From Octopus bimaculoides (taxonomy: Eukaryota), in assembly GCF_001194135.2 (NCBI RefSeq), contig NC_068996.1, positions 51,996,662-52,044,538 of the forward strand: DNA of 47,877 bases, in the 5' to 3' direction. The position numbers were made by a program, and so were the translations under genes. Below the pieces are notes generated by a model. It was not told where the DNA came from and searched no databases. It worked only from the letters and a program-made list of their open reading frames with translations. Below, piece after piece: positions 370 through 37,596 of the stretch. Each line of letters starts with the position of its first letter. The stretch's first letter is position 1.

Positions 370-484
370 GGTATGTATATTTTTATTAATATTTAGCAGA
401 AGTAACAGAGTGACTCCAGGTTCAAGAGTTTCATGTGTTGGCACTTGATAAGTGCCAATGCATGAAACTCTTGGACCTCGGTAC
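370..484. repeat. Head-to-head palindrome of a repeat family with hammerhead-like remnants (also at 8745-8822)
   Basis: ccaggttcaagagtttcatg..ttggcact tgata agtgccaa..catgaaactcttggacctcgg is self-complementary. The left arm on the minus strand (gaaactc..gagtcactctgttacttctgcta.atattaataaaaatatacata) recurs on the plus strand at about 8760-8820. Confidence 0.7.
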
Positions 485-1120
485 CAGCACTGGCAGGGTC
501 ACCAAGTAACGCGCAAGAAAAAGGTCCTTTAAGAGATGGGATATTGAAGGAGGTGACCTTGTGCCATATGGTGAAAGGTTAGAATGTGACAGAGAGAGAG
601 AGAGAAATAGTTGTCTTGCTGTAGAGGAGATTCATGGTTACCCGGTCAGAGGAAGAGAGAGAGAGAGATTGATGCCAGGAACAACTGTGTTTTTGTAGAG
701 GTGATACATAGCTAACCAGTCAGAGGGAGAGAGAAAGAGAAAGAATGCGAAAGAGCAGTAGAGAAATGGTGGCGAAGTGCCTGGGAACAGGGGTCAGAAT
801 ATAAATGGGATGGTAGAGAAAAGCAAGGGAGAGATAAGTGGTAGCAAAAGTAGAAGGGCATACTCTCAAGATACAGCGTCAGAATATAAATGCTAGGGTA
901 TTGCCAAGATGCATGAGCAGGGAGAAGTGACTTCACATGAATGCAAAGAGAGTGGGGGTGGGGAATGCAGTGACTGGTGAAACCCAGGGATACAGAAGGT
1001 TGTGAGGGTGAGGTAACAGGATAGCAATGATGCAGAGTGCAAGGCAGTGAGGACAGGATTGAGGAGCAAGAGATAAACATAAGCTTGGTGCATGAAAAAA
1101 GGAAATGTGAGGAAGAAGGC
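480..1120 (-). mobile_element. Non-autonomous RTE-tailed repeat with purine-rich (plus strand) body, fragment
   Basis: Shares the ccaagtaa.ttgcaag..a motif and GA-rich body with 9255-10260 and 11735-12540. Confidence 0.5.
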
Positions 1121-1247
1121 AGATGTCGTTTGATTTGTTGGGGTATATATATACATATACACTATGAGGCTATTTAAGCCTCTTATATAAGATGTGATTG
1201 ACAGCAGAAGAAAACTGGATATATAAACCTTTATTCTCCTTATTACT

Positions 1248-1252
<5 letters not shown>

Positions 1253-1280
<28 letters not shown>
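1253..1280. repeat. (AC)n microsatellite
   Basis: Direct reading. Confidence 0.95.
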
Positions 1281-1510
1281 TTCACCTTTTGGGGATTAAT
1301 CGATATGCAGGTATTCTATTTCAGATAATACAAAAAATAACCTTATGAGTATATCTGAAAGTAAACTCATGGTATCAGTTTGCACATCACGAAATAATAC
1401 TTAAAGGACATAGCCAAAAAATCTAGATAAAGAGAGTACACCCTTAATTGGAGTATTATAGGTAGAGCCCACTCCTATAATATTGGGAATAAAATGTGTT
1501 TATTATGCAT

Positions 1511-3436
1511 AACAGATGGATCAGGTAATGAGAGTCACAGAGAGGGTCATAGCCCAACTAATTAGGGAGAGAGTCAGTCTAGATGAGATGCAGTTTGGGT
1601 TCGTGCCAGGGAAAAGTACCACTGATGCTATATTTCTGGTAAGACAGCTGCAGGAGAAATACCTAGCCAAGGATAAATCTCTGTACCTGGCTTTCATTCA
1701 TATGGAGAAAGCCTTTGACAGGGTCCCCTGATCCCTCATCTGGTGGTCAATGAGGAAACTAGGGATACATAAATGATTAGTGAGAGCTGTGCAAGCCATG
1801 TAGAGGGATGCTATCAGTAAGGTGAGGGTTGGCAACNNNNNNNNNNNNNNNNNNNNNNNNNNNNNNNNNNNNNNNNNNNNNNNNNNNNNNNNNNNNNNNN
1901 NNNNNNNNNNNNNNNNNNNNNNNNNNNNNNNNNNNNNNNNNNNNNNNNNNNNNNNNNNNNNNNNNNNNNNNNNNNNNNNNNNNNNNNNNNNNNNNNNNNN
2001 NNNNNNNNNNNNNNNNNNNNNNNNNNNNNNNNNNNNNNNNNNNNNNNNNNNNNNNNNNNNNNNNNNNNNNNNNNNNNNNNNNNNNNNNNNNNNNNNNNNN
2101 NNNNNNNNNNNNNNNNNNNNNNNNNNNNNNNNNNNNNNNNNNNNNNNNNNNNNNNNNNNNNNNNNNNNNNNNNNNNNNNNNNNNNNNNNNNNNNNNNNNN
2201 NNNNNNNNNNNNNNNNNNNNNNNNNNNNNNNNNNNNNNNNNNNNNNNNNNNNNNNNNNNNNNNNNNNNNNNNNNNNNNNNNNNNNNNNNNNNNNNNNNNN
2301 NNAGTTCAGAGAGCTCTTACCTCTGCTGGTGACAAAGGGCCTCTCACTCAGTGTAAAAGGCAGACTGTATGAACAGCCATGCTACATGGCAGTGAAACAT
2401 GGGCCTTGACTGCTGAGGACATGTGTAAGCTCGCAAGGAATGAAGCCAGTATGCTCTGCTGGATGTGTAATGTTAGTGTGCATACTCGACAGAGTGTAAG
2501 TACCTTGAGAGAAAAGTTGAACCTAAGAAGCATCAGTTGTGTGCAAGAGAGACGATTGCGCTGGTATGGACATGTGATGAGAATGGATGAGGATAACTGT
2601 ATGAAAAAGTGCCACACCTTAGCGGTTGAGGAAACCTGTGGAAGAGGTAGACCCAGGAAGATCTGTGATGAGGTAGTGAAGCACGACCTTCGAACATTAG
2701 GCCTCACCAAGGCAATGACTTCTGACCGAGACCTTTAGAAATATGCTGTGCATGAGAAGACCCGGCAAGCCAAGTGAGACCTAAATCCAAGGCCTCTGCC
2801 AGGGGTGTAGCCAGCCCACTTATGCATACCTTTCCTTCATTGGACATTAAACTCCACTTATGATGACCTATTGAGGCAAATAAAATCGAAATCGAACTAA
2901 ATTCAATGACTGGCACCCATGCCAACGTCTCTTTCATTGGACACTAAACTCGGCTTGCGAAGACCTGTTGGGGCAAGTGAAAGCGAAATTGTGATGGCAC
3001 CTGTACCAGTGGAGCGCTAAGAGCACTGTCCGAGCGTGATCGTTGCCAGAACAGCTGCCTGGCTTCCGTGCCAGTGCATTTCAGCACCATTTGAGTGTGA
3101 TCGTTACCAGCGTTGCCTTCCTGGCACGTGAAAAAACATTCGAGCGAGGTCGTTGCCAATGCCGCTGGACTGGCTCCTGTGCAGGTGACATGTAAAATAC
3201 ACCATTTCGAGTGTGGCTGTTGCCAGTACCGCCTGACTGGCCTTCGTGCCAGTGGCACGTAAAAGCACCCACTACACTCTCGGAGTGGTTGGCATTAGGA
3301 AGGGCATCCAACTGTAGAAACTCTGCCAAATCAGATTGGAGCCTGGTCTAGCCATCTGGTTCACCAGTCCTCAGTCAAATCGTCCAACCCATGCTAGCAT
3401 GGAAAGCAGACGTTAAACGATGATGATGATGATGAT
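1511..3436 (+). mobile_element. 5'-truncated RTE-clade LINE: RT fragment, 3' UTR and (GAT)n tail
   Basis: Translates to MQFGFVPGKSTTDAIFLVRQLQEKYLAKDKSLYLAFIHMEKAFDRVP and LHGSETWAL..RLRWYGHVMRM..GRGRPRK, with stops and frameshifts. Ends ..gacgttaaacgatgatgatgat. Gap at 1837-2302. Confidence 0.93.
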
Positions 3437-3790: not shown

Positions 3791-4934
3791 TTACTTCACT
3801 GACCTTGGCCACCGACCATCCCAGCTCCTGGCCAGTTCCAAGCAGTCGATTTTTTTGCGGGCACCTGCCAGCATGCTGTGGACCGGTTTACCTTTTCCAG
3901 GCATCCCCGTCATCTGAACATCCCCCCCAACCAAACCCTTGGCCCTTTGATGTCTCCAACGTCACACTGACATCATCATAAAACCGGCCAACAAGGGTGG
4001 AGCCGTGGTGGTGTGGAACACAGACCTCAACAAAGGAGAAACTCTCTGCCAACTTCAAGACACCTCCTTCTACTGCCCTCTGACCCCACGCCCAGCTACC
4101 AACAGACTGTGTTCTCCACTATCCATGACCTCATTTCCTCCTCCTGTCTCCCCCCACCGCCCCCAACCTCATTGTACGCACCCCTCACACCCCCACAATT
4201 TACTTCCTCCCCAAAATCCACAAACCTAACAACCCTGGTCGCCCCATNNNNNNNNNNNNNNNNNNNNNNNNNNNNNNNNNNNNNNNNNNNNNNNNNNNNN
4301 NNNNNNNNNNNNNNNNNNNNNNNNNNNNNNNNNNNNNNNNNNNNNNNNNNNNNNNNNNNNNNNNNNNNNNNNNNNNNNNNNNNNNNNNNNNNNNNNNNNN
4401 NNNNNACATCCATGACACCAACCAAGCACTTCGTTTGTTCAACTCTTTCTCCTTCCCTCCTGGCCCCTCTAAACTTCTCTTCATTCTCGACATCCAGAGC
4501 CTTTACACAGTGGTCCCTCACCACGAGGGGCTGTGTGCACTCCAACATTTCCTTGACCTTCGACCCAACCTGACACATCCACACTGCACTATCTCTGATG
4601 CCTCTGTCTTCTTTCTTGACATTTCGGTCAGCATTCATCACTCCACTCTCACCACCTCCATCCACTACAAACACACAAACTCACACTCATACCTCAACTT
4701 CTCCTCCTCCCACCTTAAACACACCAAGCTTAATCCTGTGTGACCCCTCTGTCCGGCATTCGCCATGATAGATCGCTAGCCACTGCACATTCTTTATTTT
4801 CTCTCCCTGTTCCTTTCTGTGGAAGAGCGTAGGCTCAAAATGTTAAAGACATTTTCATTTCCTGAGCGTTAAACTAATACATCTGTTTGTTGTCTACACC
4901 ACCTGTCTTTGTCTTTTTTTCTTCTGAATTCTCC
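3791..4934 (+). mobile_element. Penelope-like element: internally deleted RT plus 3' pseudo-LTR, flanked by a 16-bp direct repeat
   Basis: DIIIKPANKGGAVVVWNTD, LFILDIQSLYTVVPHHEGL and FLDISVS..TTSIHYKHTNSHSYLNFSSSH are PLE RT motifs. cctataaatacccata occurs at 3775-3790 and 4935-4950. Confidence 0.88.
4813..4848 (+). ncRNA. Hammerhead-like variant (CUGUGGA core) in the Penelope pLTR, decayed
   Basis: cttt CTGTGGA a GAGC gtag GCTC aAAA tgt t aaag. Second copy at 8112-8147 retains GAAA. Confidence 0.45.
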
Positions 4935-5104
4935 CCTATAAATACCCATAGTTCCCTGCTATCTTCTTCCTCTAATCACCATTTTAGTACCAGTAAAAAA
5001 AAGGAAGATATGTATTTGAATTTTTCTTGTTGTATATCACATTTCTGATGTTTAATCTTATATCTCACATTCTGTATTTGACATATATATATATATATAT
5101 ATGA

Positions 5105-5245
5105 CAGGCTTCTTTCCATTTTCATCTACTAAATCCACTCACAAGGATTTGGTTGGTCCGAGGCTATAAAAGAAGGCACATGCCCATGGTGCCACTCAGT
5201 TAGACTGAACCAGGAACCATTTGGTTCTTATTACACAGTCATGCC
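5105..5245 (-). mobile_element. tRNA-derived SINE, 5' part
   Basis: Reverse complement of the head of the intact SINE at 43494-43877. Confidence 0.8.
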
Positions 5246-7904: not shown

Positions 7905-8223
7905 TGAAAACAGGAAAAATAAAATTCAAAATATGCATTTAGCGGAAGCAATAGAGTGATTCAAGGTCTGAGATCACCGCCACTTTATTATCTCCCCTTC
8001 TTCTTAGCTCTCCTGTGTGACCCTTCTGTCCAGCATTAGCCATGATAGATCGCTAGCCACTACACATTTTTTTTTCTCTCTTTGTTTCTCTTCTTGTTTC
8101 TTTCTGTGTTCCTTTCTGTGGAAGAACGTAGGCTCGAAATGTTAATGACTTTTTTCACTTCCTGATACATCTATTTGTTTTCTACACCACCTATCTTCAT
8201 CTGTTGTTCTTTGTGAATTTTAC

Positions 8224-8230
<7 letters not shown>
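7905..8230 (+). mobile_element. Solo Penelope-like pLTR (second copy of 4736-4934)
   Basis: cctgtgtgaccc.tctgtcc.gcatt.gccatgatagatcgctagccact.cacatt.. and downstream sequence align with 4736-4940. Confidence 0.8.
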
Positions 8231-8266
<36 letters not shown>

Positions 8267-8309
8267 TATATACACACACACATACACACATATATATACA
8301 TACATTTAT

Positions 8310-8645
8310 ATTCTTTTATTTGTTTCACTCATTTGACTGTGGCCATGTTGGAACACTGCCTTTAGTCAAACAACCCCAGGACTTATTCTGTCAGAATCTA
8401 TTGCCAAATTACTAAGTTATGGGGACATAAACACACCAGCGTCGGTTGTCAAGTGATGTTGCGGGGACAAACACAGACGCACAAACCTATACACACACAC
8501 ACATACATATACATATACATATATATGACGGCCTTCTTTCAGTTTGCGTCTACCATATCCACTCACAAGGCTTTGGCCGGCCTGAGGCTATAGTAGAAAA
8601 CACTTACCCATGGTACCATGTAGTGGGACTACCACACAGCCACTC
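8310..8645 (-). mobile_element. tRNA-derived SINE, near full length
   Basis: Reverse complement aligns with 43494-43877, including the internal (TA)/(TG) tract. Confidence 0.85.
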
Positions 8646-9254
8646 CTACACCTATTCTAGGACATTCTAGAACATTCCACAGGGGAATATATTTATTTAT
8701 TTGTCAACTGCTATATAAACTCACAGGCCTGTGACTAGTTTGAAAATTGTCAACATGCACGAAACTCTCAGACTTTGAGTCACTCTGTTACTTCTGCTAT
8801 ATATTAATAAAAATATACATAGACTCATGTTCTGAGTTTTATTTTTACCCTATTTGCATCAACATACCTATGTGTGTGTGTATGTGTCTGTTTGCATGTG
8901 CATGTGTGTGCGCACGCACGTGTGTGTGTATGCGCATGTATGTATGTATCTATGTATGTGCATAACATCATCATCATCATCATCATCATTTAATGTCCAT
9001 TTTCCATATTGGTTCATAACAGGATCCAGTAAGCTGCAAGGTGGTGTCAAGTTCCAATTCTTTTATTCTTTTAGTTGTTTTAGTCATGTGCATGCCAGCA
9101 TGGAAAACGGACATTAATCGATAATGATGATGATGATGATGATGACAGGCTTCTTTCAGTTTCTATCTGCCAAATCCACGCAGTGGAACTGAACCCAGAA
9201 CCATGTAGTTGGTAAGCAAGCTACTTACCACACAGCCACTTCTGTTAGTTTTTA

Positions 9255-10269: not shown

Positions 10270-10520
10270 AGCAGGGCCCCACATGTACAAGAATACAAGT
10301 GGTTTTAGAATATCATGCTTGCTTTGATAGACAGGTCTTTTTGAGCAAAGCAAATCACCACTGACCTCAGTCCTCTGCCATCTCATCTGTAACACTCAGC
10401 ATCTTGAGATCAACCTTCAATATTTCATCCCACACCCCCCTGGGTCTCCCTCTTCCACAAGTTCCATCCACTTTAAACAATTGGTACTGTCCTCTCCCAT
10501 ATTCATTGCACGACCAAACT
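10270..10520 (-). mobile_element. RTE LINE C-terminal fragment
   Basis: Minus strand reads like ..GTCGRGRP..VWDEILKVDLKMLSVTDEMAEDxGQW. Confidence 0.7.
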
Positions 10521-10790
10521 ACAAGGTAATTAAATTTTGTCTTTTATTCTATAAATTCTGGAGATGTACTTGCATAGCAAGTGACCTGATCTGAGATCGC
10601 ATGCTGGAATGAAAACAATTGCAGTGTGAAAGGTATTTATAAGCCATTTAAAATAACACACAAAAACCGTTAGATTCACTTCAACATTTAAATATAATTT
10701 GTCAAACTATTTTCATCGCTTTGAGACCGCGACCTGTTCACTGACAAAATTCTGTGCTAAACACCTTCCACGCTGCAATTGTCTATAAAT
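10518..10790 (-). mobile_element. Probable Penelope-type pLTR repeat carrying a hammerhead variant
   Basis: CpG-rich repeat-like segment containing the three-way-junction fold at 10696-10751. PLE assignment is by analogy only. Confidence 0.5.
10696..10751 (-). ncRNA. Minimal type-I hammerhead-like ribozyme with G3-C8 covariant core
   Basis: tttgtca GTGAACA g gtcgc ggtctcaaa gcgat GAA aatagt t tgacaaa: 7-bp stem I, 5-bp stem II, near-palindromic stem III. Confidence 0.6.
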
Positions 10791-22090: not shown

Positions 22091-23858
22091 CGTGATTTAC
22101 TGGTGTAAGGATACTTAAAGACACCACATTGTTTTCACCATCTGCCATGTCAAAGCTACCCTGCCAGAGCAATAAATTGGACATGAGATCAAGTTCTTGT
22201 TTATAGTAAATAGTTATTTTGTTGTTTTCTGGGGAAATAGAAAAGTAGAGCCATGGAATATGTAAAAATAATATGAGTAGGCTGTCAGGAAAACAAGTTA
22301 TTTGTAGTATAGCAAGAAACTGCCAAAACTCTTGGGATACTTTGAAATCTTAGCAATGTTTGATTACATTTTAAACAAACAAATATAATAGGCAGAGAAG
22401 TGATTCAAAAAGTGTGTCAAAATATTAGCATGAGAACTAAAAATGTTCTTCTGATAAGAATTGATATGACGCAAATACAAGCAATTATTAGTTGATAATT
22501 TGAATAAGTATAAAAATGTCTATTAACTGAAGTCTGCCAATGTAGAACTATTTCCATAACTGTTGGCAGATAAAGCTAATGGAAGAAAACAAAGATCAAA
22601 TACATGAACCAAAACAAGTCTGTTTTTGTAAGATACCAAATACATATTATCTATTTTTGATTACCAGAAATTTCATTTAGCTCATGAGAATGGCTTTCTT
22701 CTATAAGTTTTCAGATAAGATATAATCTAAAATTTTTGCAGACAAGACTCAAAAAATATTAACATGCATATTTATCTACATTGGATCTATATAAACGTTA
22801 TAATATGCTATAGTAGAAGAGTGAAGGGATGGTGTTATGGAAAAGGATACTACATAGATGACGATGCTGGTGTTCATGATGTTGCATGCTGGTTCTGATG
22901 GTGAAGGATATAAATTGCATACAATATAGCCATAGTGGTTGTCATCAGGTATTTGTGCTGCTGTTGATGGTGAATTAGTGTTCTTGTTCTAACTGAATAG
23001 TCTTGATAAGCTCATTCAAACAGCTAAATGCCACAAATCTGGTCAATATGAAATGCTGAATTACACTCAATTTAGAGCCTATACTATACACTCTGCCATG
23101 TATGTTTTAAGAACTTTACTGGTCAAACTATCTATCAAGTGTGTAATCTACGAACTCTCTTATTTGTCCGTTAAAACAAGAACTTAAGTTCACATCCTAT
23201 AATTATCTAGGATAATTCCCACTTTATAGAAATACTATCCTTTTAATAGTAATATTTAACCCTGTTAACATAATGAATCACACCAAAATTAGCTCTCAAT
23301 TATTAAGCTCTCATCAGCTCTCAATCCTTAAGTGTTGTTAACCTTGAATATTCTATTGTCGAGTTATCAACATCTAAACAGGAATATTACCCCAATAAAT
23401 GCAGAAGTGGCCTCCAAACAGTTTTACAACTATATGGCTCAAATCTGTTTTGGTTTTAGCTTGCAATATCTTTTAATTTTTACAGGGATTTCAATAAATT
23501 GCTCCTCTAAATTCTTAGATATGATTGAAATGGAAGAAGAATTTAATAATGATTACATATGATAATTCTTGATATTCTATAAAGTTTGTCAATATAGTAT
23601 TGTTTATTGAGTTATAAATCTAACCAAATGATTCATTGTTAGAAAATTACTATTTGTAAATCTCACGAGAGATATTCAACAACAGTACTTTGGAGTAAAG
23701 ATTGTTTGCCAACATAACATGGCAATCCTGGTTTAGGATGAATGTTGCTGTAATTTAGCCCAAGAAGACATTGTCTCCAGCTGGCTATATGACACGATCT
23801 GTGTCCTTATATTTTCGAACAAGGGAATCTAGCACCCCCACTCAGCTCAAAACAAGAC

Positions 23859-23901
23859 CTGTGTATCACGATTTCCAGGTTATTTCCCTTCATCGGCACA
23901 G
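23859..23901 (-). ncRNA. Minimal hammerhead-like ribozyme (CCGAUGA core)
   Basis: ctgtg CCGATGA agg gaaataa cct g GAA atcgtgat a cacag. Confidence 0.65.
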
Positions 23902-24111
23902 AATAATTATTCGGCTAGAGGTCCTAAACCAGGACTGCCATGTTATGTTGGCAAACAATCTTTACTCCAAAGTACTGTTGCTGAATATCTCTCGCTGTGA
24001 GATTTAAAAATAATAATTTTCTAATTTATAAACCAGTGACTAGTTGTCACTTTGGAAACTATATATTTCAAACAAGAATTTGGTAGTGCCACCTCTAGCT
24101 GAGCAATTATT

Positions 24112-24154
24112 CTGTGCTGATGAAGGGAAATAACCTGGAAATCGCAATACACAG
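24112..24154 (+). ncRNA. Minimal type-I hammerhead ribozyme with canonical CUGAUGA/GAAA core
   Basis: ctgtg CTGATGA agg gaaataa cct g GAA atcgcaat a cacag: 5-bp stem I. The two copies imply a palindromic stem III, AUCGCGAU. Confidence 0.75.
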
Positions 24155-24318
24155 ATATTGTTTTGAGCTGAGTGGGGGCGCTAGATTCCCTTGTTCGAAA
24201 ATATAAGAACACAGATTGTGTCGTATAGCCAGCTAGAGATGATGCCTCCTGGGGCTAAATTACAGCAACATTCGTCCTAAACCAGGACTGCCATGTTATG
24301 TTATTCATTGTTATTTAA

Positions 24319-25725: not shown

Positions 25726-26334
25726 CTTTTTTTTTTTTATCCCTATAGTGGTAGCATTCCACATGTACACACACACGCGCATATAGATATACATGTATCT
25801 ATGTATTTATGTATGTATGTATGGATGGATGGATGGATGGATGTGTGTATGTGTGTGATTATATGGTTATCATCATCATCATTTAATGTCCTTGTTCCAT
25901 ACTGGCATGGGTGGATGATTCGACAGGATGTAATGGGTCCAACGACTGCTTTGACATGGTTTGTATGGTTTGATGCCTTTCATAATGCCAGACACTTTGA
26001 AGAATGTAATGGATACTTTTTCTAATGCCACCAGCACACAAGAGCAGGTTTTTGTTGTTAGGGAGCTACATGGCTACTCACATTTAGGGGAGAGAGAATG
26101 AGAAAGAATCAATAGTAGCTACAAAGGGTAAAGTAATGGGGACACTTAATATAATGAGTGAAGAGGTTTTAGTTAAACTTATGTCAATGGAGAGGAGAAA
26201 GAAAAAAAGCAAGAACTTAACTGAATTAGAAGTCTGAAGCAAAAAACAAAACAAAACAAAACAATTCTGCTTTCTATTCTTTCACTTGTTTGTCATTGGA
26301 TCACAGACATGCATGTATGTATATATATTTATGT

Positions 26335-27143
26335 TCACTCAAATGCTTGAGTGGATCATTAGTAGTAGATAGCTTTTGTTACCTAGGAGACCAAGTTAGT
26401 AGTGGAGGAGGGAGTTCTGAAAATGTAGTTATTAGAATAAGAACAGGTTGGGCAAAGTTCAGAGAGCTTCTATCTTTGTTGGTAACTAAGGGCTTCTCCC
26501 TCAGACTGAAAGACAGATTGTATGATGCTTGTATACATACAGTTATGTTACATGGCAGTGAAACATGGGCTTTGACTACTGAAGACTTGCAAAGGCTTGA
26601 AAGAAATGAAGCTAGCATGCTCTGCTGGATGGGTAATGTCAGTGTGTATATATATGACAGTGTAAGTGATTTAAGAGAAAAACTGGATATAAGAGGCATC
26701 AGATGTTGTGTGCAAGAGAGAAGACTGCGCAGGTTTGGACATGAGATGTGTATGGAGGATGAGAGCTGCATAAAGAAGTGCCAAGCTCTAATTGTGAAGG
26801 GAAGCTGTGGAAGGGGTAGACCCAGGAAGACGTGAGATGAAGTGGTGAGAAAGGATCTTCTGATGCGAATACTCACAGGGGAAATGACAATGGATCAGAA
26901 GATGTGGTAATTTGCTGTTATTTGATAAGATGCATCAAGCTAAGTAAAATCTCTGTCTTCCACACAAAAAGCACTCAACACACTCTGGTAAGTGCTTGGT
27001 TTTAGGAAGGGCATCCAGCCATAGAAACCATACCCCAACAGACAGTTGGAGTTGGGACAGCTCCCAGCTGGCCAGCTCCATGTCAAACCATTTAGTCCAT
27101 ACCAGCATGGAAAACAGACATCAAACAATAATGATGATGATAT
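26335..27143 (+). mobile_element. RTE LINE 3' fragment with tail
   Basis: FCYLGDQVSSGGGSSE..RIRTGWAKFRELL..MLHGSETWAL..GRGRPRKT, then 3' UTR and (GAT)n. Confidence 0.92.
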
Positions 27144-27982: not shown

Positions 27983-29139
27983 ATATATTCCTTTTCTTTT
28001 ATTTGTTTCAGTCATTTGNNNNNNNNNNNNNNNNNNNNNNNNNNNNNNNNNNNNNNNNNNNNNNNNNNNNNNNNNNNNNNNNNNNNNNNNNNNNNNNNNN
28101 NNNNNNNNNNNNNNNNNNNNNNNNNNNNNNNNNNNNNNNNNNNNNNNNNNNNNNNNNNNNNNNNNNNNNNNNNNNNNNNNNNNNNNNNNNNNNNNNNNNN
28201 NNNNNNNNNNNNNNNNNNNNNNNNNNNNNNNNNNNNNNNNNNNNNNNNNNNNNNNNNNNNNNNNNNNNNNNNNNNNNNNNNNNNNNNNNNNNNNNNNNNN
28301 NNNNNNNNNNNNNNNNNNNNNNNNNNNNNNNNNNNNNNNNNNNNNNNNNNNNNNNNNCTTTCAGTTTCCGTCTGCCAAATCCACTCACAAGGTTTTGGTC
28401 GACCTGAGGTTATAGTTGAAGACACTTGCCCAAGGTGCCATGCAGTGGGACTGAACCCAGAGCCATGTGGTTCGTAAGTAAGCTACTTTATTTCAATCAA
28501 ATTGCCATCAAGGCATTACATAGAAGTGGAGGCTGCAGGCTGGACAATGACATTAATGAAATGAATGATGAAAAAAAATGGTATTAATGAGGGAATGCAG
28601 ATGACACCCGCCGATCGCTGCTTCTCTAAAACATTGTTCTTTTACAAAACACACAATTTGAGGTAATAAACCTCTTACTAATGTTCCATTGTACTCAAGG
28701 TCCTTACAATGAGGCACTAAGCCTCTTACCAAAAATAACACAATGTCCTTACAAATGAGACAATAGCCCTCTTACATTTTCTCTTATGGACCAAATGCCC
28801 TTTCAGTATGAGGCACTAACGGTCTCTTTTGCTGAACTGCAAGGTCACAAGACCCCTACACACAGTAACACGAGTTGTCAAACAGTGGTGGAGAACAAAC
28901 ACACACACACACATATGACACACTCACACATATCTATACCTATATCTATCTATCCATAAACTAGCCATGACTATCTTTATCTAAATATATAACTGGTACC
29001 TGTGCCAGTGGCATGTAAAAAGCACCCACTACACTCTTGGAGAGGTTGGCATCCAACCATAGAAGCCTTGTCAGATTAGACTGGAACCTGGTGCAGAACC
29101 CCCCTGACTTACCAGTTTTCTGTCAAACCATTGGTTGAC

Positions 29140-29290
29140 TGTGTGGGAAGAAGTTTGCTTCCCAACCACATGGTTCCAGGTTCTGTCTCACTGCATGTTA
29201 CCTTGCGCATGTGTCTTTTACTATAGCCTCAGGCTGACCAAAACCTTGTGAGTGGATTTGGTAGATGGAAACTGAAAGAAGCCCGTCATA
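29140..29290 (+). mobile_element. tRNA-derived SINE head (a minus-strand head lies at 28358-28475)
   Basis: Aligns with 43494-43640. Confidence 0.8.
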
Positions 29291-29307
29291 TATGTATATA
29301 CATACAC

Positions 29308-29353
<46 letters not shown>

Positions 29354-31059
29354 CTATTNNNNNNNNNNNNNNNNNNNNNNNNNNNNNNNNNNNNNNNNNN
29401 NNNNNNNNNNNNNNNNNNNNNNNNNNNNNNNNNNNNNNNNNNNNNNNNNNNNNNNNNNNNNNNNNNNNNNNNNNNNNNNNNNNNNNNNNNNNNNNNNNNN
29501 NNNNNNNNNNNNNNNNNNNNNNNNNNNNNNNNNNNNNNNNNNNNNNNNNNNNNNNNNNNNNNNNNNNNNNNNNNNNNNNNNNNNNNNNNNNNNNNNNNNN
29601 NNNNNNNNNNNNNNNNNNNNNNNNNNNNNNNNNNNNNNNNNNNNNNNNNNNNNNNNNNNNNNNNNNNNNNNNNNNNNNNNNNNNNNNNNNNNNNNNNNNN
29701 NNNNNNNNNNNNNNNNNNNNNNNNNNNNNNNNNNNNNNNNNNNNNNNNNNNNNNNNNNNNNNNNNNNNNNNNNNNNNNNNNNNNNNNNNNNNNNNNNNNN
29801 NNNNNNNNNNNNNNNNNNNNNNNNNNNNNNNNNNNNNNNNNNNNNNNNNNNNNNNNNNNNNNNNNNNNNNNNNNNNNNNNNNNNNNNNNNNNNNNNNNNN
29901 NNNNNNNNNNNNNNNNNNNNNNNNNNNNNNNNNNNNNNNNNNNNNNNNNNNNNNNNNNNNNNNNNNNNNNNNNNNNNNNNNNNNNNNNNNNNNNNNNNNN
30001 NNNNNNNNNNNNNNNNNNNNNNNNNNNNNNNNNNNNNNNNNNNNNNNNNNNNNNNNNNNNNNNNNNNNNNNNNNNNNNNNNNNNNNNNNNNNNNNNNNNN
30101 NNNNNNNNNNNNNNATATATATATAAGGTGCAGCAGAAAGGATGTCCTGATTTCAAAGGTTAATAAAAGACAAATGCATGAAGATGCATGAAAGAACTTT
30201 GTATTTCTATGAAGTTCATTAAATGCTGTTTTCTTTTACTGTTTCAGGTGGTGCCCACCATGGCCTGGAATGGAGAGCATTGTGAATTTGTTGTTGAAGA
30301 GTTTGTTTTTTATTAACCTTTAAAATCGGGGCAACCTTTCTGCCGCACCCTGCATATATATATTTATAGACAAGATATAAATAATGGTCATTACCTATTT
30401 TATCTATATCTATACACAAACACACACACACACAAACATATATTTGCATGCGTGTGTGTTTGTGCTTGTATGTATATTATCTAACTGATAAGTGATTCAT
30501 AAAATCAGGACATAAGATATTGTACCATGTTTTCCACACATCTCTGAATATAACGATTGCTTAGAGTCAAAGGAAAGAAAAGTTTGTCTAAATGGGAGTG
30601 TATATTGAAACACTCAGGTCCATCTGTGAAACGTTATCAATGGCATTGCACAAATTCCTTTGGCCTAATTTAGAACACAAGTGACAAAACTATGTTTGTC
30701 AAAATAAAAACAACTTGAAAGCACACCTTGAAGATAATTCCTCCACTTCCGCCTGAAATGAAAAAATAAAGTGAATGTGTTTCTAATAGCAGAGCAGATT
30801 AGGCTGAAAGATAGGGAAACATTGCAATAGGAGAAGGCTGTAGTACTTCAGATCCTGCATTCTTATTTATAGTATATGAAGGTGGTAGTGCTAAGTAGTG
30901 ATGTGAATAAATACAAACTTGTTACTAGTTCAAAAATGCTTGAGGAATATTCAAACCTGTAAGAAAGTGATTTGCTGTGTTTTTCCATGAAAGAAATTTC
31001 TCGTTGTTGATAAACAGGTGTAAATACACTGAATCAGCACACAGCATTTTATAACCAGA

Positions 31060-31107
31060 GTGTGGGATGCATACATTTCAGAGTGATTATTTCCCCTTCA
31101 GCCATAG
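31060..31107 (-). ncRNA. Minimal hammerhead-like ribozyme, decayed copy
   Basis: ctatgg CTGAAGg ggaa ataatca ctct GAA atgtatgcat C ccacac. Confidence 0.6.
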
Positions 31108-31323
31108 AGACTGGAAAGGCAAACACTGAGAACTGACATGAGATGCAGATCCCTCTTATGATATTCCCATCGTGGTTCAATGACTGGTTGTGCGGTTCCA
31201 CAGCTCACTGTAAATTAGATATGGGATGACAGTGCTAAGCATTGATGTGTATAAATACAGACTTGTCACCAGTTCAAATGTGTTGGCTCACATGTCAGTT
31301 CATAATGTCTGCTTTTCTGGTGT

Positions 31324-31371
31324 CTGTACCTGAAGAGGAGATAACCACTCCAAAATTCATGCATCCAACAG
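31324..31371 (+). ncRNA. Minimal hammerhead-like ribozyme, decayed copy
   Basis: ctgtac CTGAAGA ggag ataacca ctcc aAA attcatgcat C caacag. Confidence 0.65.
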
Positions 31372-31572
31372 TCTGGTCAGTGAGCGTTGTGAACAGACTC
31401 GGTGTATTTACATCTATATTTGTCTACAACAAGAAATTTTCTTCAGGACAAATTACAGTGAATCACTTTCTTATGGGTTTGAATATGCCTTAAACAATTT
31501 TGTATTCTTATTTATAGATACTAACCTTAAAAAAATAATAAGGTTTGTTATGTTCTCAGACATACTTAAGTA

Positions 31573-32465
31573 TTGGGTCATTCCATAATTAATGCAGTTT
31601 TTTATACTTCTTTTATTTTTCAAAATTAAGATAAACAAAGTTCTTTTTTAATCTAAAATATACTCTCCTTCATTTTCTACAATACTCTTCCATCTATCTG
31701 GTAGACTTGCAAGGCCCATCTTCCAAAATTCACTTGTCCTGGATGAAAAATACTCCTCCAGTACTGTTCTGACCTTGTCTACAGAATTCATACTTTTTCT
31801 ATCCAAGTGAGTTTGAAGACTTTGAAATAAATGATATTCAGATGGGGCAATGTGAATACGGTGGGTGGTGCATCGTTTCCCATTCAAACTGCTCCAGCCT
31901 TTGGAATATCATCTTTACTGAGCATTATCCTGATGGAAGAACACCTTTTTTCTTGAAACCAAAGAGGATCATTTTCCAATGCCATGCAGGTATCTATGAA
32001 TGATTGAATGACCAAATCCAAGCTTCTCTGCTAGTTCTTCAACAGTTACCAGGGTTTGCAGGACGTCCTCGTTGAGCTCTACAGATCTTCCAGGATGAGG
32101 CTCATCTTCTAGGCTGTAGTTTCTGGCTCTGAATTTCTGGAACCACTCTTGACACTGGCTTATGCTTATTGTCCTATCCCCATATACTGCATTAATATTC
32201 CTCACACTTTCCATTGCGTTGTTGCCTTTATTGAACTCATAAAGCAAAATATGCCAAATTTGCTCCTTTGCCATTTTCATTATAGCTTTGAAAAAATAAC
32301 TGTTAAAATTGAACTGCACTCTTTAAAACGTGAACTAGGAATAAATACAAGATAAAATTACTACCTGCTTTTATAGCAAGTTGATGCAGGTAGTTTATCC
32401 CATCCCCCTCCAACTTTTAGTTCATGCAATTGAAAAAAAACCACATTATTTATGGGATGACCCAA
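31573..32465 (-). mobile_element. mariner transposon, internally deleted, with both TIRs and TA target duplication
   Basis: TA|ttgggtcattccataattaatg ... cattatttatgggatgacccaa|TA. Encodes MAKEQIWHILLYEFNKG..FQKFRARNYSLEDEPHPGR and APSEYHLFQSL..LPDRWKSIVENEGEYILD. Confidence 0.93.
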
Positions 32466-34845: not shown

Positions 34846-34855
34846 TATATATATA

Positions 34856-35215
34856 CTGTAAATCCTCCTTGAGTATACACGGGATTTTTAGGGGCCTGTA
34901 CCTCTGAAAAACCTAAACTTTGTGTATAATATGCACCCCTTCTCTAACTTGAGTCAAGGAGGTCTATATAACGTCCTTGGTTTGTAAACGTATATACGGT
35001 AACGTCCTTTATTATTATTGTGTATATAACATAATGCAAACATGTAGCTTTTTTGTGCTCTTTGCAGAAAATAAAGAAATAGCAGTGAAAAATAAATATA
35101 AAATAAATTGCCTTTACATATTTATCACTTAGAAAATTTTGCTTAGAAAATATTTTAGAAATTTTGACCCTTAAATTTTGGGAAAAAAGTGTGGATTATA
35201 CTCGAGGATTTACGG
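34856..35215. mobile_element. Tc1/pogo-type MITE in a (TA)n tract
   Basis: TA|ctgtaaatcctc..gagtata ... tatactcgaggatttacgg|TA. Confidence 0.75.
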
Positions 35216-35234
35216 TATATATATATATATATAT

Positions 35235-36264
35235 ATATGATGATATACATATATCATCATCATTTAACGTCTGTTTTCATGTTGGCATGGGTAGGACAGT
35301 TTGACTGAGAACTGGCAAGGTAGGAGGCTGCACCAGGTTCCAATCTGTTCTGGCAAGGTTTCTACAGCTGTATGCCCTTCCTAATACCAACCACTCTGAG
35401 GGTATAGTGGGTGCTTTTTATGTGCCACCGGCATGGGAGCCAGTTAGGCAGTACTGGCATCGACCATGTTTGGATGGTACTTTTTATGTGCCACCATTAT
35501 TGGAGCCGGTCAAGGGGGGACTGGCATCAAACACGTTCGCATAGTGCTTTTTACATTCCACTGGCATGGGGAGCCATTCAGGTGGAGCTGGCATCAGCCA
35601 CAACTACAATTTCCATTTGATTTCGATCTTGATTTGATTTTGATTTTGATTTCACTTGACTCAATAAGTCTTCTCAAGCGCCGCATATTGACCAATGATT
35701 CAAGGGTACTTTTAAATGGGCCGGTTATGTGACACTGGTATAGGCTACAGCTGCGATCTCACTTTACTTGTCGGGTCTTCTCAATTACAGCATATCTCCA
35801 AAGGTCTTGGTCTCTTGTCATTACCTCTGTGAGGTCCAACGTTTGAAAGTCGTGCTTCACCACCTCATCTCATATTATATATATGTTATCTAAGTGACCA
35901 AGTCAGTAATGGAGACGCATGCTCTGAGAGCATAGCTGCTAGTATAAAAATAGGCTGGGCATAATTCAGAGCTCCTACCTCTGTTGGTAACAAAGGACTT
36001 CTCCCTCAGAGTGAAAGGCAGACTGTATGATGCCTGTGTGCAAACAGCCATGTCACATAGCAGTGAAACATGGGCCGTGACTGCCGAGGACAAGCATAGG
36101 CTTGAAAGAAATGAAGCTCGTATGCTTCGCTGGATGTGTAATGTCAGTGTGTATGTACGACAGAACATAAGTGTCTTAAGAGAAAAACTGGGCATAAGAG
36201 GCATCAGATGTGGTATGCAAGAGAGACGACTGCACTGGTATGGTCATGCGATGTGTATGGATGA
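35235..36264. mobile_element. RTE LINE with 5' inversion: 3' part on minus (35235-35872), upstream RT part on plus (35894-36264)
   Basis: Minus: DEVVKHDFQTLDLTEVMT... Plus: YLSDQVS..FRELLPLL..RRLHWYGHAMCMDE. Confidence 0.85.
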
Positions 36265-36628
36265 ACCACATGTTTCACTAATAACGCTCTGGAAGTTGAA
36301 GGAACTTGGCTACAAAGTTCTTCCCCACCCAGCTTATTCCCCAGACCTTTCTCCTACCGACTACCACTTTTTTAAGCACCTTGATGGTTTCCTGCGAGAG
36401 AAGGAGTTCAAAAATCAGACCAATGCTGAAAGTGCATTCAAAGAGTTCATCAGCTCCAGAACTCCAGATTTTTATGTTACTGGAATAAACAAACTTGTAA
36501 CTCGTTGGCAAAAATGTGTTGATTGTAATTGTACTTACTTTGGTGAATAAAATTAGTGCATTGTTGAAATATATTGCGATGAATTTCATGTTTCAGAGCA
36601 TTGCTTTCTTTCTACTTAACCTGATATA
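36265..36628 (+). mobile_element. mariner 3' fragment
   Basis: PHVSLITLWKLKELGYKVLPHPAYSPDLSPTDYHFFKHL..RWQKCVDCNCTYF (YSPDL motif). TIR-like end aacctgata. Confidence 0.92.
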
Positions 36629-36753
36629 CATATATACCAGAGTAAGCATGTAAATGTGAAACAAGGTGGGAGAAAATATTACTTGAATACTGAAGGTAAA
36701 ATAGTATACTTTATTAATAGAGCTGCAAAGACATTACAAAAATATCACAAAAA

Positions 36754-36795
36754 AACTACTACTAAGAGTTTCATGTTCCCGTTCGTCGGACAGTT
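36754..36795 (-). ncRNA. Minimal hammerhead-like ribozyme, U4C core
   Basis: aactgt CCGACGA acg ggaa cat GAA actc t tagt A gtagtt. Confidence 0.6.
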
Positions 36796-36810
36796 GTGAT
36801 TCTGAATCAC

Positions 36811-36852
36811 AATTGTCCAACAAAGGGGAACGTGAAACTCTGAGTAGCAGTG
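36811..36852 (+). ncRNA. Minimal hammerhead-like ribozyme, U4C core, CpG-decayed
   Basis: aattgt CCaACaA agg ggaa cgt GAA actc t gagt A gcagtg. Confidence 0.55.
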
Positions 36853-37596
36853 TTTTTTTGTGATATTTTTGTGACGTTTTTGCAGCTCTATTAATAATAT
36901 ATACATAAATATATATATATATTGTCAGTAGATCATATATCTTAAAAAGAAGCACTCTCTAACCATTAGAGCAGTAATGTATTTATAGGAAGTTAATTAT
37001 ATGGCCAGTCATAGAGTAACCAATAGTTTCACATCCATAAAGTGCTTAGCCTTATAGACAACTCATCAGTATATATAACAAAGCAAGAAAATGGAAATAT
37101 TTTGGTATTATTTATTCTCCATTGCACATTTTTCATTTGGTAATAAGAATTACAAAGGAACATTATATGATTTTTCTCTATCTGAAGATTTTCTAACAGG
37201 AAATTCCTTACATGTCTATATAGCATGGAACCCTTTGTAATTATTAACAAATGAGATACATGTAATGGTAAATAACTAATGCAAAAAAATTTCCATTTTC
37301 CCATTTTGTTATCCAACAACTGCAAATAATATTTCCATAATTATCAATTTTAATTTATGCTTTAATTTACATACAACAGTAACTATGGAGACATATTGAT
37401 TGTAATAATGGAATAAGCAGATGAGCTCCAAGAGGAAACAGCTGGGATTTACCCTAACTATCTATCAATCTATATAAACACACATGTGTGTATGTGTCTC
37501 TCTGTGTTTTTCCATCAACACCAGCACCACTTTGTAACTTAGCAAAAGTGACTCAGAGAATATGTACCAGGTTTAAAATGAAAAGTAGTGGGAATG

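What the first reader, a model, noticed from the sequence alone, without database searches (positions are those of the whole stretch)
370..36897. A family-diverse set of minimal hammerhead ribozymes hidden in Penelope-type terminal repeats
Seen: about six unrelated repeat families each carry the same type-I architecture (stem I, CUGANGA-like core, short stem II, GAA, short mostly palindromic stem III, NUH, stem I). They lie at about 395-475/8750-8790, 4813/8112, 10696, 23859/24112, 31060/31324 and 36754/36811. Known: PLE pseudo-LTRs and retrozymes carry minimal type-I hammerheads that cleave as dimers through palindromic stem III. Inference: this genome hosts a radiation of such ribozymes exploring core variants (G3C8, C4, U6, inserted bases) that strict CUGANGA searches would miss.
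Basis: partly seen in the sequence, partly recalled or inferred. Interest (0 to 1): 0.9.

Follow-up and report, generated by a model that had tools for sequence, protein, structure and literature searches.

The report
Decayed hammerhead ribozymes in octopus retroelement relics
Two short, dead mobile-element insertions in this octopus-like DNA each carry a pair of hammerhead self-cleaving RNA motifs of the known Penelope/retrozyme type. The other four claimed "variant" ribozymes are no more frequent than chance predicts.

Summary
The finding is partly right. Two of the six places hold real type-I hammerhead motifs.

Element A is an insertion at 23642-24302 flanked by an 11-bp target-site duplication. 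Its motifs lie at 24111-24155(+), with a perfect CUGAUGA...GAA core, and at 23902-23858(-), which reads CCGAUGA.

Element B is an insertion at 30873-31503 flanked by a 14-bp duplication. Its motifs lie at 31107-31060(-) and 31324-31371(+). Each has one core lesion and two broken stem I pairs.

A and B are unrelated outside the motif. They share stem I of 6 bp, stem II of 4 pairs (one of them an A·G mismatch in A) and a palindromic stem III, with 8 of 15 pairs changed on both sides. Both are head-to-head inverted copies, the arrangement typical of Penelope-like insertions, and both have decayed neutrally, largely at CpG sites.

A control that keeps the real sequence and swaps the core letters puts the exact canonical core at p about 0.002. 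One-letter variants of the core are not enriched (5 seen, 1.9 expected). This covers C4 at 36754/36811 and U6 at 4813/8112.

395-475/8750 has no core or stem II; at 395-475 it is a plain hairpin. The G3-C8 motif at 10748-10698(-) is a single borderline case (p about 0.04).

Rfam finds no hammerhead. The kind is known; the claimed "radiation of core variants" is not shown.

The parts
23642..24302 (.). Element A: a 661-bp composite insertion. An inverted 5'-truncated copy occupies 23922 down to 23642 on the minus strand. It abuts a plus-strand copy at 23921-24302, which is one 353-nt unit plus a 29-nt terminal redundancy.
   Evidence: Inverted arms 23711-23922 and 24091-24302 are 91% complementary. 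The direct repeat 23921-23949 / 24274-24302 is 100% identical with a spacing of 353 nt. GC is 39%.
23631..23641 (.). Left copy of the 11-bp target-site duplication ATTCATTGTTA of element A. The right copy is at 24303-24313.
   Evidence: direct repeat D2.
24303..24313 (.). Right copy of the 11-bp target-site duplication of element A.
24111..24155 (+). Hammerhead A2. Stem I is 6 bp (ucugug/cacaga), the core is CUGAUGA, and stem II is an A·G mismatch plus 3 bp with loop aaauaa. GAA follows, then stem III aucgcaau. H17 is A at 24149, so cleavage is predicted after 24149.
   Evidence: It is the only strict-core match in the window. The minimum-energy fold keeps stems I and II.
23858..23902 (-). Hammerhead A1, the inverted partner of A2. 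The core reads CCGAUGA (C at position 4) and stem III is aucgugau. H17 is at 23864.
30873..31503 (.). Element B: a 631-bp composite insertion. From left to right it holds a 60-nt 'tail' (30873-30934, a direct copy of 31219-31278), an inverted copy at 30931-31143 (minus strand), a spacer, and a plus-strand copy at 31231-31503.
   Evidence: GC is 38%.
30859..30872 (.). Left copy of the 14-bp target-site duplication ATTCTTATTTATAG of element B. The right copy is at 31504-31517.
   Evidence: direct repeat D2.
31504..31517 (.). Right copy of the 14-bp target-site duplication of element B.
31060..31107 (-). Hammerhead relic B1: cuaugg CUGAAGG ggaa auaauca cucu GAA auguaugcau C ccacac. A9 is changed to G, and 4 of 6 stem I pairs remain.
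31324..31371 (+). Hammerhead relic B2: cuguac CUGAAGA ggag auaacca cucc AAA auucaugcau C caacag. G12 is changed to A, and 4 of 6 stem I pairs remain.
10698..10748 (-). Single-copy hammerhead-like motif with a swapped C3-G8 pair (GUGAACA). It has one extra base after A9, a 5-bp stem II, GAA and a 7-bp stem I. Its status is unresolved.
   Evidence: The chance of any of the three 3/8 swaps appearing in the window is about 0.04.
4813..4848 (+). Hammerhead-like motif of repeat C, copy 1, with U at position 6 and A at position 12. It occurs at the chance frequency for one-letter core variants.
8112..8147 (+). Hammerhead-like motif of repeat C, copy 2, with U at position 6 and only 2 bp in stem I.
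36704..36904 (.). A 201-bp near-perfect palindrome (family 6). C4-type hammerhead-like motifs lie at 36795-36754(-) and 36811-36852(+). It folds as one long hairpin.
418..478 (.). A 61-nt perfect hairpin at the end of a family-1 copy (372-448, minus strand). The partner copy lies at 8745-8821(+). There is no hammerhead core and no stem II.
3821..4734 (+). Remnant of a Penelope-like element reading frame, with the DKG-type motif, ...YFLPKIHKPNNPGRP and RT motifs. It is frameshifted, crosses the 4248-4405 gap, has an internal deletion of about 87 codons, and is cut at both ends.

Best explanation
Elements A and B are old, dead insertions of two different short non-coding retroelements of the Penelope-like/retrozyme kind.

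Shown: each inserted in one event as a composite of two head-to-head inverted copies bounded by a target-site duplication. Each copy carries, on its own sense strand, a type-I hammerhead with stem I of 6 bp, stem II of 4 pairs (one an A·G mismatch in A), and a stem III that was a perfect palindrome (AUCGCGAU in A, AUGCAUGCAU in B). Since insertion the copies have drifted neutrally, with heavy CpG loss. This explains C4 or U4 in A, G9 in B1, A12 in B2 and the broken palindromes.

Inferred from the known biology of the family: in the active source elements, two ribozymes paired through the palindromic stem III in multimeric transcripts. They cut after H17 and released unit-length RNAs with 5'-OH and 2',3'-cyclic phosphate ends. 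These could be circularised and copied back into DNA by a Penelope-type RT/GIY-YIG enzyme. The more-than-unit-length copy in A (353 + 29 nt) fits a circular or multimeric template.

Of the other four places, one (395-475/8750) is not a hammerhead, and two (C with U6; 36754/36811 with C4) are as common as chance allows. One (10748-10698, G3-C8) is an undecided single case.
For: Core test on the real sequence. Of 57 structural frames in the window (stem I at least 5 bp, stem II at least 3 bp, GAA, A..U, H not G), one has the canonical core, against a mean of 0.014 per arbitrary six-letter core.

Pooling the two copies of each of 82 repeat pairs, 3 loci are compatible with the exact canonical core: A, B and a weak AT-rich palindrome. 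The mean is 0.14, and only 8 of 4096 cores do as well.

Shuffles give 0.04 strict hits per window.

A and B share no significant similarity outside the motif. On a structure-anchored alignment:
- 84.5% of cells pair, against 66.6% in shuffles (0 of 500 as high).
- 8 of 15 pairs changed on both sides.
- Slid controls reach at most 56% paired and at most 1 such pair.

Restored dimers fold into the double-hammerhead form with an 8- or 10-bp intermolecular stem III. Energies are -26.9 against -19.4 kcal/mol for A, and -35.2 against -19.4 for B.

The target-site duplications are 11 and 14 bp, and the termini are not inverted repeats of each other. The head-to-head arrangement, the tail and the partial tandem match the published description of Penelope-like insertions (PMC8557442) and of paired opposite-strand hammerheads 100-700 bp apart (PMC4209133).

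A Penelope-like RT remnant lies in the window, and full-length relatives carry RVT_1 and (at sub-cutoff scores) GIY-YIG.

Half of the A1/A2 differences are CpG-type, and only 2 of at least 10 CpGs survive in both arms.
Against: - Rfam's hammerhead models give no match, even on 336 bases at E up to 10.
- Stem II of A starts with an A·G mismatch instead of the usual G10.1-C11.1.
- On mutational grounds the ancestor of A more likely had CCGAUGA than CUGAUGA (likelihood ratio about 6, my estimate). The one perfect core may therefore itself be a product of CpG decay.
- B is canonical only as the union of two arms that are 26% diverged.
- I built the covariation alignment to fit the structure, and it rests on two independent families.
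- No further copies could be fetched, so there is no family consensus.
- A model built from A alone does not find B.
- No RT/GIY-YIG frame is linked to A or B.
- There is no evidence of expression or cleavage.
Confidence: 0.7

Rival explanations
1. One reading: five or six independent repeat families all carry working or once-working hammerheads. On this view the deviations (C4, U6, G3-C8, inserted bases) are lineage-specific natural core variants.
For: Each variant motif is individually unlikely within its own repeat. C is the only GAA/A..U frame in its repeat and lies one letter from canonical. Both arms at 36754/36811 had C4 at insertion, and CpG restoration gives an ACG-GGAA-CGU stem II. 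A1 has the same C4, and this may be the ancestral state of A. The G3-C8 swap is the one core change shown to keep activity (PMC9901934), and it comes with the extra base after A9 that is typical of Penelope hammerheads (PMC4209133). A U3-A8 natural variant is already published.
Against: Window-wide, the canonical core plus or minus one letter gives 5 loci against a mean of 1.9, and 308 of 4096 arbitrary centres do as well. About 0.04 is expected for the 3/8 swaps, so one hit is borderline. All single changes in the CUGA turn, which would include U4C and A6U, are reported as low-activity. The motif at 395-475/8750 has no core or stem II. Families 1 and 6 are related, not independent. The sites were chosen by eye for resemblance.
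Confidence: 0.12
2. Nothing here is a ribozyme. All the motifs are chance matches favoured by hairpin-rich foldback or MITE-like repeats, whose inverted arms supply 'stem I' for free.
For: Every claimed place lies in or next to an inverted repeat. Rfam sees only microRNA-like hairpins. Two places fold as plain long hairpins. Relaxed descriptors give 16 chance hits per window at two mismatches.
Against: The decoy-core control uses the real sequence, so hairpins are already accounted for, and it still singles out the exact canonical core. A and B share the same three-helix plan with compensatory changes and palindromic stem III although their flanks are unrelated. In both, the sense strands point outward. 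The termini are not inverted repeats, and the duplications differ in length at 11 and 14 bp.
Confidence: 0.1
3. A and B are real hammerhead-bearing elements, but they were mobilised by a LINE (for example the RTE-type elements abundant here). That would make them like the Schistosoma Sm-alpha SINE-like elements rather than dependants of a Penelope-like enzyme. The inverted halves would then come from twin priming.
For: Variable 11-14 bp duplications also fit LINE target-primed insertion. RTE fragments are frequent in the window. No Penelope frame is linked to A or B.
Against: Both arms copy the same region, whereas twin priming joins neighbouring regions. There is no poly(A) or 3' microsatellite tail. 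The tail extension and partial tandem are described as Penelope hallmarks not seen with non-LTR elements (PMC8557442). Animal retrozymes are reported to derive from Penelope pseudo-LTRs (bioRxiv 10.64898/2026.07.22.740005).
Confidence: 0.15

Closest known systems
Canonical type-I hammerheads of metazoan non-LTR retrozymes (Cervera & de la Pena 2020, PMC7229834; Li et al. 2026 preprint)
   Same: Stem I of 6 bp, stem II of 4 pairs with a 6-7 nt loop, and a very short stem III capped by a palindromic loop, giving dimer-dependent folding. The units are non-coding, a few hundred nt long (353 nt in A), below 45% GC and flanked by target-site duplications. Insertions longer than one unit fit a circular or multimeric template.
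   Different: There are no long tandem arrays here: A holds 1.08 units plus an inverted partial copy, and B holds two inverted copies. A has an A·G mismatch at 10.1/11.1. The copies are decayed. No circular RNA evidence exists.
Minimal hammerheads in pseudo-LTRs of Penelope-like elements (Cervera & de la Pena 2014, PMC4209133; Lunse et al. 2017)
   Same: Type-I topology and a palindromic stem III that implies action as dimers. Paired motifs on opposite strands 100-700 bp apart are reported. The insertions show the complex inverted/tandem architecture with a tail. A Penelope-like RT remnant lies in the same window.
   Different: The published minimal form has stem II of 6-8 bp, stem I of 4-5 bp, an unpaired base between A9 and 10.1, and G10.1-C11.1. 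A and B instead have 6 bp and 4 pairs. B has no extra base, and A lacks the G-C pair. No RT/GIY-YIG frame sits between or next to the arms.
Rfam Hammerhead_1 (RF00163) hits reported in cephalopods (235 in the giant squid genome, PMC6962438)
   Same: Type-I hammerheads in a cephalopod genome.
   Different: None of the motifs here reaches any Rfam hammerhead model, even at E up to 10 on a 336-base stretch.
Schistosoma Sm-alpha/Sj-alpha SINE-like hammerhead elements
   Same: Short non-coding dispersed repeats with a type-I hammerhead whose stem III is too short for monomer cleavage.
   Different: Those carry a pol III promoter and occur as single or tandem copies. No tRNA-like head was looked for or seen here, and the inverted composite structure differs.

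Membership tests
Hammerhead ribozyme (any type) | Conserved core C3 U4 G5 A6 N7 G8 A9 ... G12 A13 A14, then A15.1 ... U16.1 and H17 (not G) | tested here: met
   A2 at 24111-24155 matches every position. A1, B1 and B2 each miss one. The union of B1 and B2 matches all. Not met at 395-475/8750. One letter off in C (U6) and at 36754 (C4). The 3/8 pair is swapped at 10748-10698.
Hammerhead ribozyme (any type) | Three helices around the core, supported by covariation | tested here: met
   For A against B, 84.5% of cells are paired and 8 of 15 pairs changed on both sides. Shuffled and slid controls are far lower. Caveats: the alignment was fitted by hand and rests on two families.
Hammerhead ribozyme (any type) | Self-cleavage after H17 | not testable with these tools
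   No experiment or transcriptome is available. The present copies are decayed.
Rfam hammerhead families (RF00163, RF00008, RF02275-7) | Score at or above the curated gathering threshold | tested here: not met
   No hammerhead match at gathering score, at E up to 10 on the window, or at E up to 10 on 23840-24175.
Penelope-like element minimal hammerhead (Cervera & de la Pena 2014) | Palindromic 15.2-16.2 and loop 3, allowing dimer formation | tested here: met
   B1 auguaugcau pairs fully with itself, with G-U wobbles. A is aucgcaau / aucgugau, which are the two CpG-decay products of AUCGCGAU. Restored dimers fold as double hammerheads.
Penelope-like element minimal hammerhead (Cervera & de la Pena 2014) | Unpaired nucleotide between A9 and 10.1, and a conserved G10.1-C11.1 pair | tested here: inconclusive
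   A has an extra A after A9, but it faces a G, and the next pair is G-U. B has no extra base, and has G10.1-C11.1 only in B2 or the CpG-restored ancestor. C and 10748-10698 do have the extra base.
Penelope-like element minimal hammerhead (Cervera & de la Pena 2014) | Long stem II (6-8 bp) and short stem I (4-5 bp) | tested here: not met
   A and B have stem I of 6 bp and stem II of 4 pairs. This is the 'canonical' metazoan type-I plan.
Penelope-like element pseudo-LTR | Repeat flanking, or in tandem with, an RT plus GIY-YIG reading frame | tested here: not met
   tblastn with 15 long homologues of the window's Penelope-like fragment (three of them with RVT_1 and sub-cutoff GIY-YIG) finds coding remnants only at 3821-4734, and none near A, B, 10698 or 36704. 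Repeat C1 begins exactly where that remnant ends (4734/4735), but C2 has no such neighbour.
Penelope-like element insertion architecture | 5'-truncated copies in inverted and/or partial tandem arrangement, a tail extension of some tens of bp, and a variable-length target-site duplication | tested here: met
   A has an inverted 281-nt copy plus a 382-nt copy (353 + 29 nt) and an 11-bp duplication. B has an inverted 213-nt copy plus a forward copy, a 60-nt tail and a 14-bp duplication. This was compared with PMC8557442.
Metazoan non-LTR retrozyme | Tandem arrays of 170-400 nt units, each with a type-I hammerhead | tested here: inconclusive
   The unit of A is 353 nt, but only 1.08 units are present. 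B shows no forward tandem. Other genomic copies could not be sampled.
Metazoan non-LTR retrozyme | Expression as small circular RNAs | not testable with these tools
   No transcriptome data are available.
MITE / DNA transposon | Terminal inverted repeats at the very ends, and a target-site duplication of fixed length | tested here: not met
   The left and right termini of A and B are not inverted copies of each other. The left arm of A runs 80 nt further than the right, and B has a one-sided tail. The duplications are 11 and 14 bp.

The most novel reading that the evidence does not exclude
Some of the deviant motifs may be genuine natural core variants of the hammerhead used by octopus Penelope-type retroelements. 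Two are candidates.

- A C4 form (CCGANGA), shared by two unrelated families. It was certainly present at insertion in the 36704-36904 palindrome, and on mutational grounds it is the likelier ancestor of element A.
- A G3-C8 pair swap at 10748-10698.

If so, strict CUGANGA searches and Rfam models would undercount hammerheads in cephalopod genomes.
Probability: 0.2. Interest if true: 0.6.

Novelty: new member of a known kind. Interest (0 to 1): 0.33.

Why it matters
Hammerheads in Penelope-like elements and animal retrozymes are well documented, and cephalopod genomes already give Rfham-type hammerhead hits in Rfam scans. Two more decayed families therefore add little by themselves.

Three things are useful here.
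- These copies are invisible to Rfam, so cephalopod counts based on Rfam are probably low.
- The two insertions, complete with target-site duplications, tail and 1.08-unit copy, are clean examples of the composite Penelope-style insertion product for very short non-coding elements.
- The case is a reminder that CpG decay can both destroy and create canonical core letters. Core "variants" must therefore be called on family consensus sequences, not on single copies.

If C4 or G3-C8 forms proved to be the family consensus and active, that would widen the known natural sequence space of the ribozyme.

Tried and rejected
- Rfam scans at gathering score, at E up to 10 on the window, and at E up to 10 on 23840-24175 gave no hammerhead. 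They returned only microsatellite and hairpin look-alikes of microRNA families.
- Fetching further copies failed. Translating an open frame across element A and searching the protein collection gave nothing. Two exact-pattern scans of metagenome contigs for the A and C motifs gave nothing.
- 20.9 kb of Octopus vulgaris chromosome (L001) shares other repeats with the window at 78-91% identity, but holds no A, B, C or family-6 copy and no hammerhead.
- Two ENA contigs (L002, L003) are unrelated DNA.
- The word-indexed protein search with the Penelope fragment found nothing, and Pfam gave nothing for it. The exhaustive HMMER search did work.
- A covariance model built from A1 and A2 alone recovers only A1 and A2. 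B and all other claimed sites fall below noise (best other hit 12.5 bits, E 0.2). This model is too sequence-specific to serve as a test.
- MAFFT/RNAalifold on the raw motifs misaligns the core. I therefore used anchored segments to hold my structural alignment.
- Reading C1/C2 as pseudo-LTRs of the Penelope remnant is rejected. No coding remnant lies downstream of either copy, and C2 lacks the upstream remnant. A shared 16-mer, CCTATAAATACCCATA, is within chance for a 48-kb window.
- Reading 372-448 and 8745-8821 as the two ends of one 8.4-kb element is unsupported. No target-site duplication is present, and three gaps lie between them.
- Look-up of a window reading frame to name the source record found nothing on record.

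Full report
WHAT THE WINDOW IS. It is AT-rich DNA (38% GC), full of TA/TG microsatellites, with nine N runs. It carries RTE-type LINE fragments, a Mos1-type mariner and SINE-like repeats. Its RTE proteins are closest to Octopus bimaculoides and O. vulgaris entries. Its repeats match a stretch of an O. vulgaris chromosome at 78-91% identity. It is therefore an octopus or a close relative.

GAPS. None of the claimed motifs contains N. The 4248-4405 gap interrupts a Penelope-like reading frame. Homologues align at residues 359-390 before the gap and 421-472 after it, so the flanks are collinear with roughly 30 codons missing. The apparent in-frame continuity across the N run is meaningless. The pairs 372-448 / 8745-8821 and 4735-4940 / 8012-8230 are separated by gaps, so their spacing is unknown.

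RFAM. No hammerhead family matches at gathering score, at E up to 10 on the whole window, or at E up to 10 on 336 bases around element A. The listed hits are microsatellites and long hairpins resembling microRNA precursors.

DESCRIPTOR SEARCH. I wrote a type-I descriptor with these terms: stem I, CUGANGA, stem II, GAA, A15.1...U16.1, and H17 not G.
- With a strict core it finds one site, 24111-24155(+), against 0.04 expected in dinucleotide shuffles.
- At one mismatch it finds 3 loci against 1.2 expected.
- At two mismatches it finds 23 against 16.

Relaxed matching is therefore close to noise.

DECOY-CORE CONTROLS. Shuffling destroys the hairpin-rich repeats, so I also kept the real sequence and varied only the six fixed core letters.
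- The window has 57 frames with the right helices, GAA, A..U and H.
- The mean count per arbitrary core is 0.014.
- The canonical core has one frame (A2). CCGANGA has one (A1, the partner arm). The G3-C8 swap has one, at 10748-10698(-).

I then pooled the two copies of each of 82 repeat pairs found by self-BLAST (13.3 kb aligned). A position counted as compatible if either copy had the letter.
- The exact canonical core fits 3 loci against a mean of 0.14. These are A, B and a weak 68%-identical AT-rich palindrome at 37075-37312. Only 8 of 4096 cores do as well.
- The canonical core plus or minus one letter fits 5 loci against a mean of 1.9, and 308 of 4096 centres do as well.

The exact core is thus enriched, and the one-letter variants are not.

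ELEMENT A. The insertion spans 23642-24302 and is bounded by the 11-bp duplication ATTCATTGTTA. A minus-strand copy runs from 23922 down to 23642 (281 nt). It abuts a plus-strand copy at 23921-24302. That copy begins and ends with the same 29 nt (23921-23949 = 24274-24302, spacing 353), so it is one 353-nt unit plus 29 nt.

The two hammerheads point outward:
- A2: ucugug CUGAUGA agggaaauaaccug GAA aucgcaau A cacaga.
- A1: the same, with CCGAUGA, aucgugau and a final g.

Of the 20 differences between the arms, 10 are CpG-type. Only 2 CpGs survive in both arms, while 6 survive in one arm and 2 have decayed in both, to TG in one and CA in the other. It follows that stem III was AUCGCGAU, a perfect palindrome. 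It also follows that the C/T difference at core position 4 is more easily explained by CCG decaying to CTG than the reverse, with a likelihood ratio of about 6 by my estimate. Whether the source element had U4 or C4 cannot be settled from two copies.

ELEMENT B. The insertion spans 30873-31503 and is bounded by the 14-bp duplication ATTCTTATTTATAG. A minus-strand copy at 30931-31143 and a plus-strand copy at 31288-31502 are 74% identical. The 48 nt just upstream of the plus copy (31231-31278) recur at the far left (30887-30934) as part of a 60-nt one-sided tail.
- B1: cuaugg CUGAAGG ggaa auaauca cucu GAA auguaugcau C ccacac.
- B2: cuguac CUGAAGA ggag auaacca cucc AAA auucaugcau C caacag.

The 11.1/12 positions read UG in B1 and CA in B2. 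These are the two decay products of a CpG, so the ancestor had C11.1-G12. Stem III derives from AUGCAUGCAU, again a perfect palindrome. Divergence inside the motif equals that of the flanks: about 9% in A and about 25% in B, by my count on the alignments. This is neutral decay after insertion, not exaptation.

A AGAINST B. Outside the motif they are not significantly alike; local alignment scores fall within the shuffle range. On a segment-anchored alignment of A1, A2, B1 and B2:
- 84.5% of cells form standard pairs, against 66.6% in shuffles (0 of 500 as high).
- 8 of 15 pairs changed on both sides: 5 of 6 in stem I, 1 of 4 in stem II and 2 of 5 in stem III.
- Sliding the partners drops pairing to 24-56%.

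I fitted that alignment to the structure and it has only two independent lineages, so it is supportive rather than decisive. Co-folding two CpG-restored copies gives the double-hammerhead form, with stem II intact and an 8-bp (A) or 10-bp (B) intermolecular stem III. Energies are -26.9 and -35.2 kcal/mol, against -19.4 for two monomers.

WHAT KIND OF ELEMENT. The termini of A and B are not inverted repeats of each other, and the duplications differ in length. This argues against a DNA transposon. Several features match what is described for Penelope-like insertions (PMC8557442): head-to-head 5'-truncated copies, a one-sided tail, a partial tandem, and no poly(A). Cervera and de la Pena also noted hammerhead pairs on opposite strands 100-700 bp apart (PMC4209133).

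The helix sizes (6 bp and 4 pairs, with a short palindromic stem III) are those of the "canonical" metazoan type-I motif found in non-LTR retrozymes. They are not those of the minimal Penelope form with its long stem II. A recent preprint derives animal retrozymes from Penelope pseudo-LTRs.

The window also holds a Penelope-like coding remnant at 3821-4734(+). It contains ...IIIKPANKGGAVVVW... and ...YFLPKIHKPNNPGRP. An exhaustive HMMER search gave 151 relatives, and three full-length ones carry RVT_1 plus GIY-YIG (the GIY-YIG scores lie below Pfam's curated cut-off). tblastn maps the remnant to residues about 235-627 of roughly 900, with an internal deletion, and finds nothing else in the window. 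No coding sequence is linked to A or B, so they are non-autonomous.

THE OTHER FOUR PLACES.
- Repeat C (4735-4940 and 8012-8230) reads cuuu CUGUGGA a gagc guag gcuc GAA augu U aaag. It has the extra base after A9 and a G10.1-C11.1 pair, as in Penelope hammerheads. However, both copies have U6, C1 has A12, and C2 has a 2-bp stem I. C1 begins exactly where the Penelope remnant stops, but C2 has no such neighbour.
- The 201-bp palindrome at 36704-36904 has CCGACGA in one arm and CCAACAA in the other. Its stem II (ACG-GGAA-CGU) appears only after CpG restoration. As it stands it folds as a -74.6 kcal/mol hairpin.
- Family 1 (372-448 and 8745-8821) is related to that palindrome through a shared 3' end and an AATTGTC(C)AACA...GAAACTCT motif. 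It has no core box or stem II, and the 395-475 copy is a -41 kcal/mol hairpin.
- The motif at 10748-10698(-) has a full architecture with GUGAACA, one extra base, a 5-bp stem II and a 7-bp stem I. The G3-C8 swap is the only core double change that restored activity in comprehensive mutagenesis, whereas all other single and double changes in the CUGA turn are reported as low-activity (PMC9901934). It is a single copy with a window-wide chance of about 0.04.

VERDICT. Two families are real hammerhead-bearing retroelement relics of a known kind. One place is not a hammerhead. Two are at chance frequency and one is borderline.

Noticed in passing
window 3821-4734 (+): Remnant of a Penelope-like element reading frame, with a DKG-type motif, YFLPKIHKPNNPGRP and RT motifs. 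It has frameshifts, an internal deletion of about 87 codons, and the 4248-4405 gap inside it. It stops exactly where repeat C1 starts (4734/4735).
   Followed up: yes
window 46361-47272, especially around the 10-N gaps at 46739-46748 and 47034-47043: The sequence on both sides of the 47034-47043 gap is duplicated: ...LNTTEGPVNLVSVY appears twice in the 46694-47272 frame, and the same 40-mer flanks the gap on the minus strand. This looks like a scaffolding artefact inside a LINE endonuclease-like frame.
   Followed up: partly
window 31972-32319 (-) and 36260-36547 (+): A Mos1-type mariner HTH_48 domain (E 5.5e-20) lies 470 bp right of element B. A mariner-like C-terminal transposase piece is fused in frame to an RTE-like piece in the 35984-36550 frame.
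   Followed up: partly
window 1513-1835, 2303-2893, 10370-10543 (-), 26230-26832, 35984-36260: Several fragments of one RTE-type LINE family, with RVT_1 and a ...GRGRPRK... C-terminus. They are 62-75% identical at protein level to Octopus bimaculoides and O. vulgaris proteins, and 85-88% identical in DNA to O. vulgaris.
   Followed up: partly
window 5101-5242, 8525-8666, 20805-20960, 28358-28488, 29136-29304 (-), 43494-43663 (-): An abundant SINE-like repeat of about 150 nt that usually sits next to TA/CA microsatellites. It is 87% identical to copies on an Octopus vulgaris chromosome (L001 1162-1313).
   Followed up: no
G12 is replaced by A. One-mismatch hits like this are expected by chance.
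   Followed up: partly
window 3883-3920 (-): This is the sixth-best match to the model built from element A (10.9 bits, E 0.68): guuCAGAUGA cggg gaug ccug GAAA... It lies antisense within the Penelope-like remnant and is probably chance.
   Followed up: no
window 37075-37312: A weak AT-rich palindrome (68% identity) whose pooled arms are compatible with a canonical core around CTGAAGA at 37182. At this divergence the pooling is very permissive, so I treat it as noise.
   Followed up: partly
window 29288-29356, 8229-8299, 41128-41173, 45150-45545: The sub-threshold Rfam 'mir-297 / mir-3149 / mir-1277' hits are TA/TG microsatellites, not microRNA genes.
   Followed up: yes
window 43967-44749 (-): A 260-aa open frame with a ...CTVCGRTRSIRRDSFF... 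zinc-finger-like stretch gave no Pfam match. It may be a transposase-derived gene fragment.
   Followed up: no
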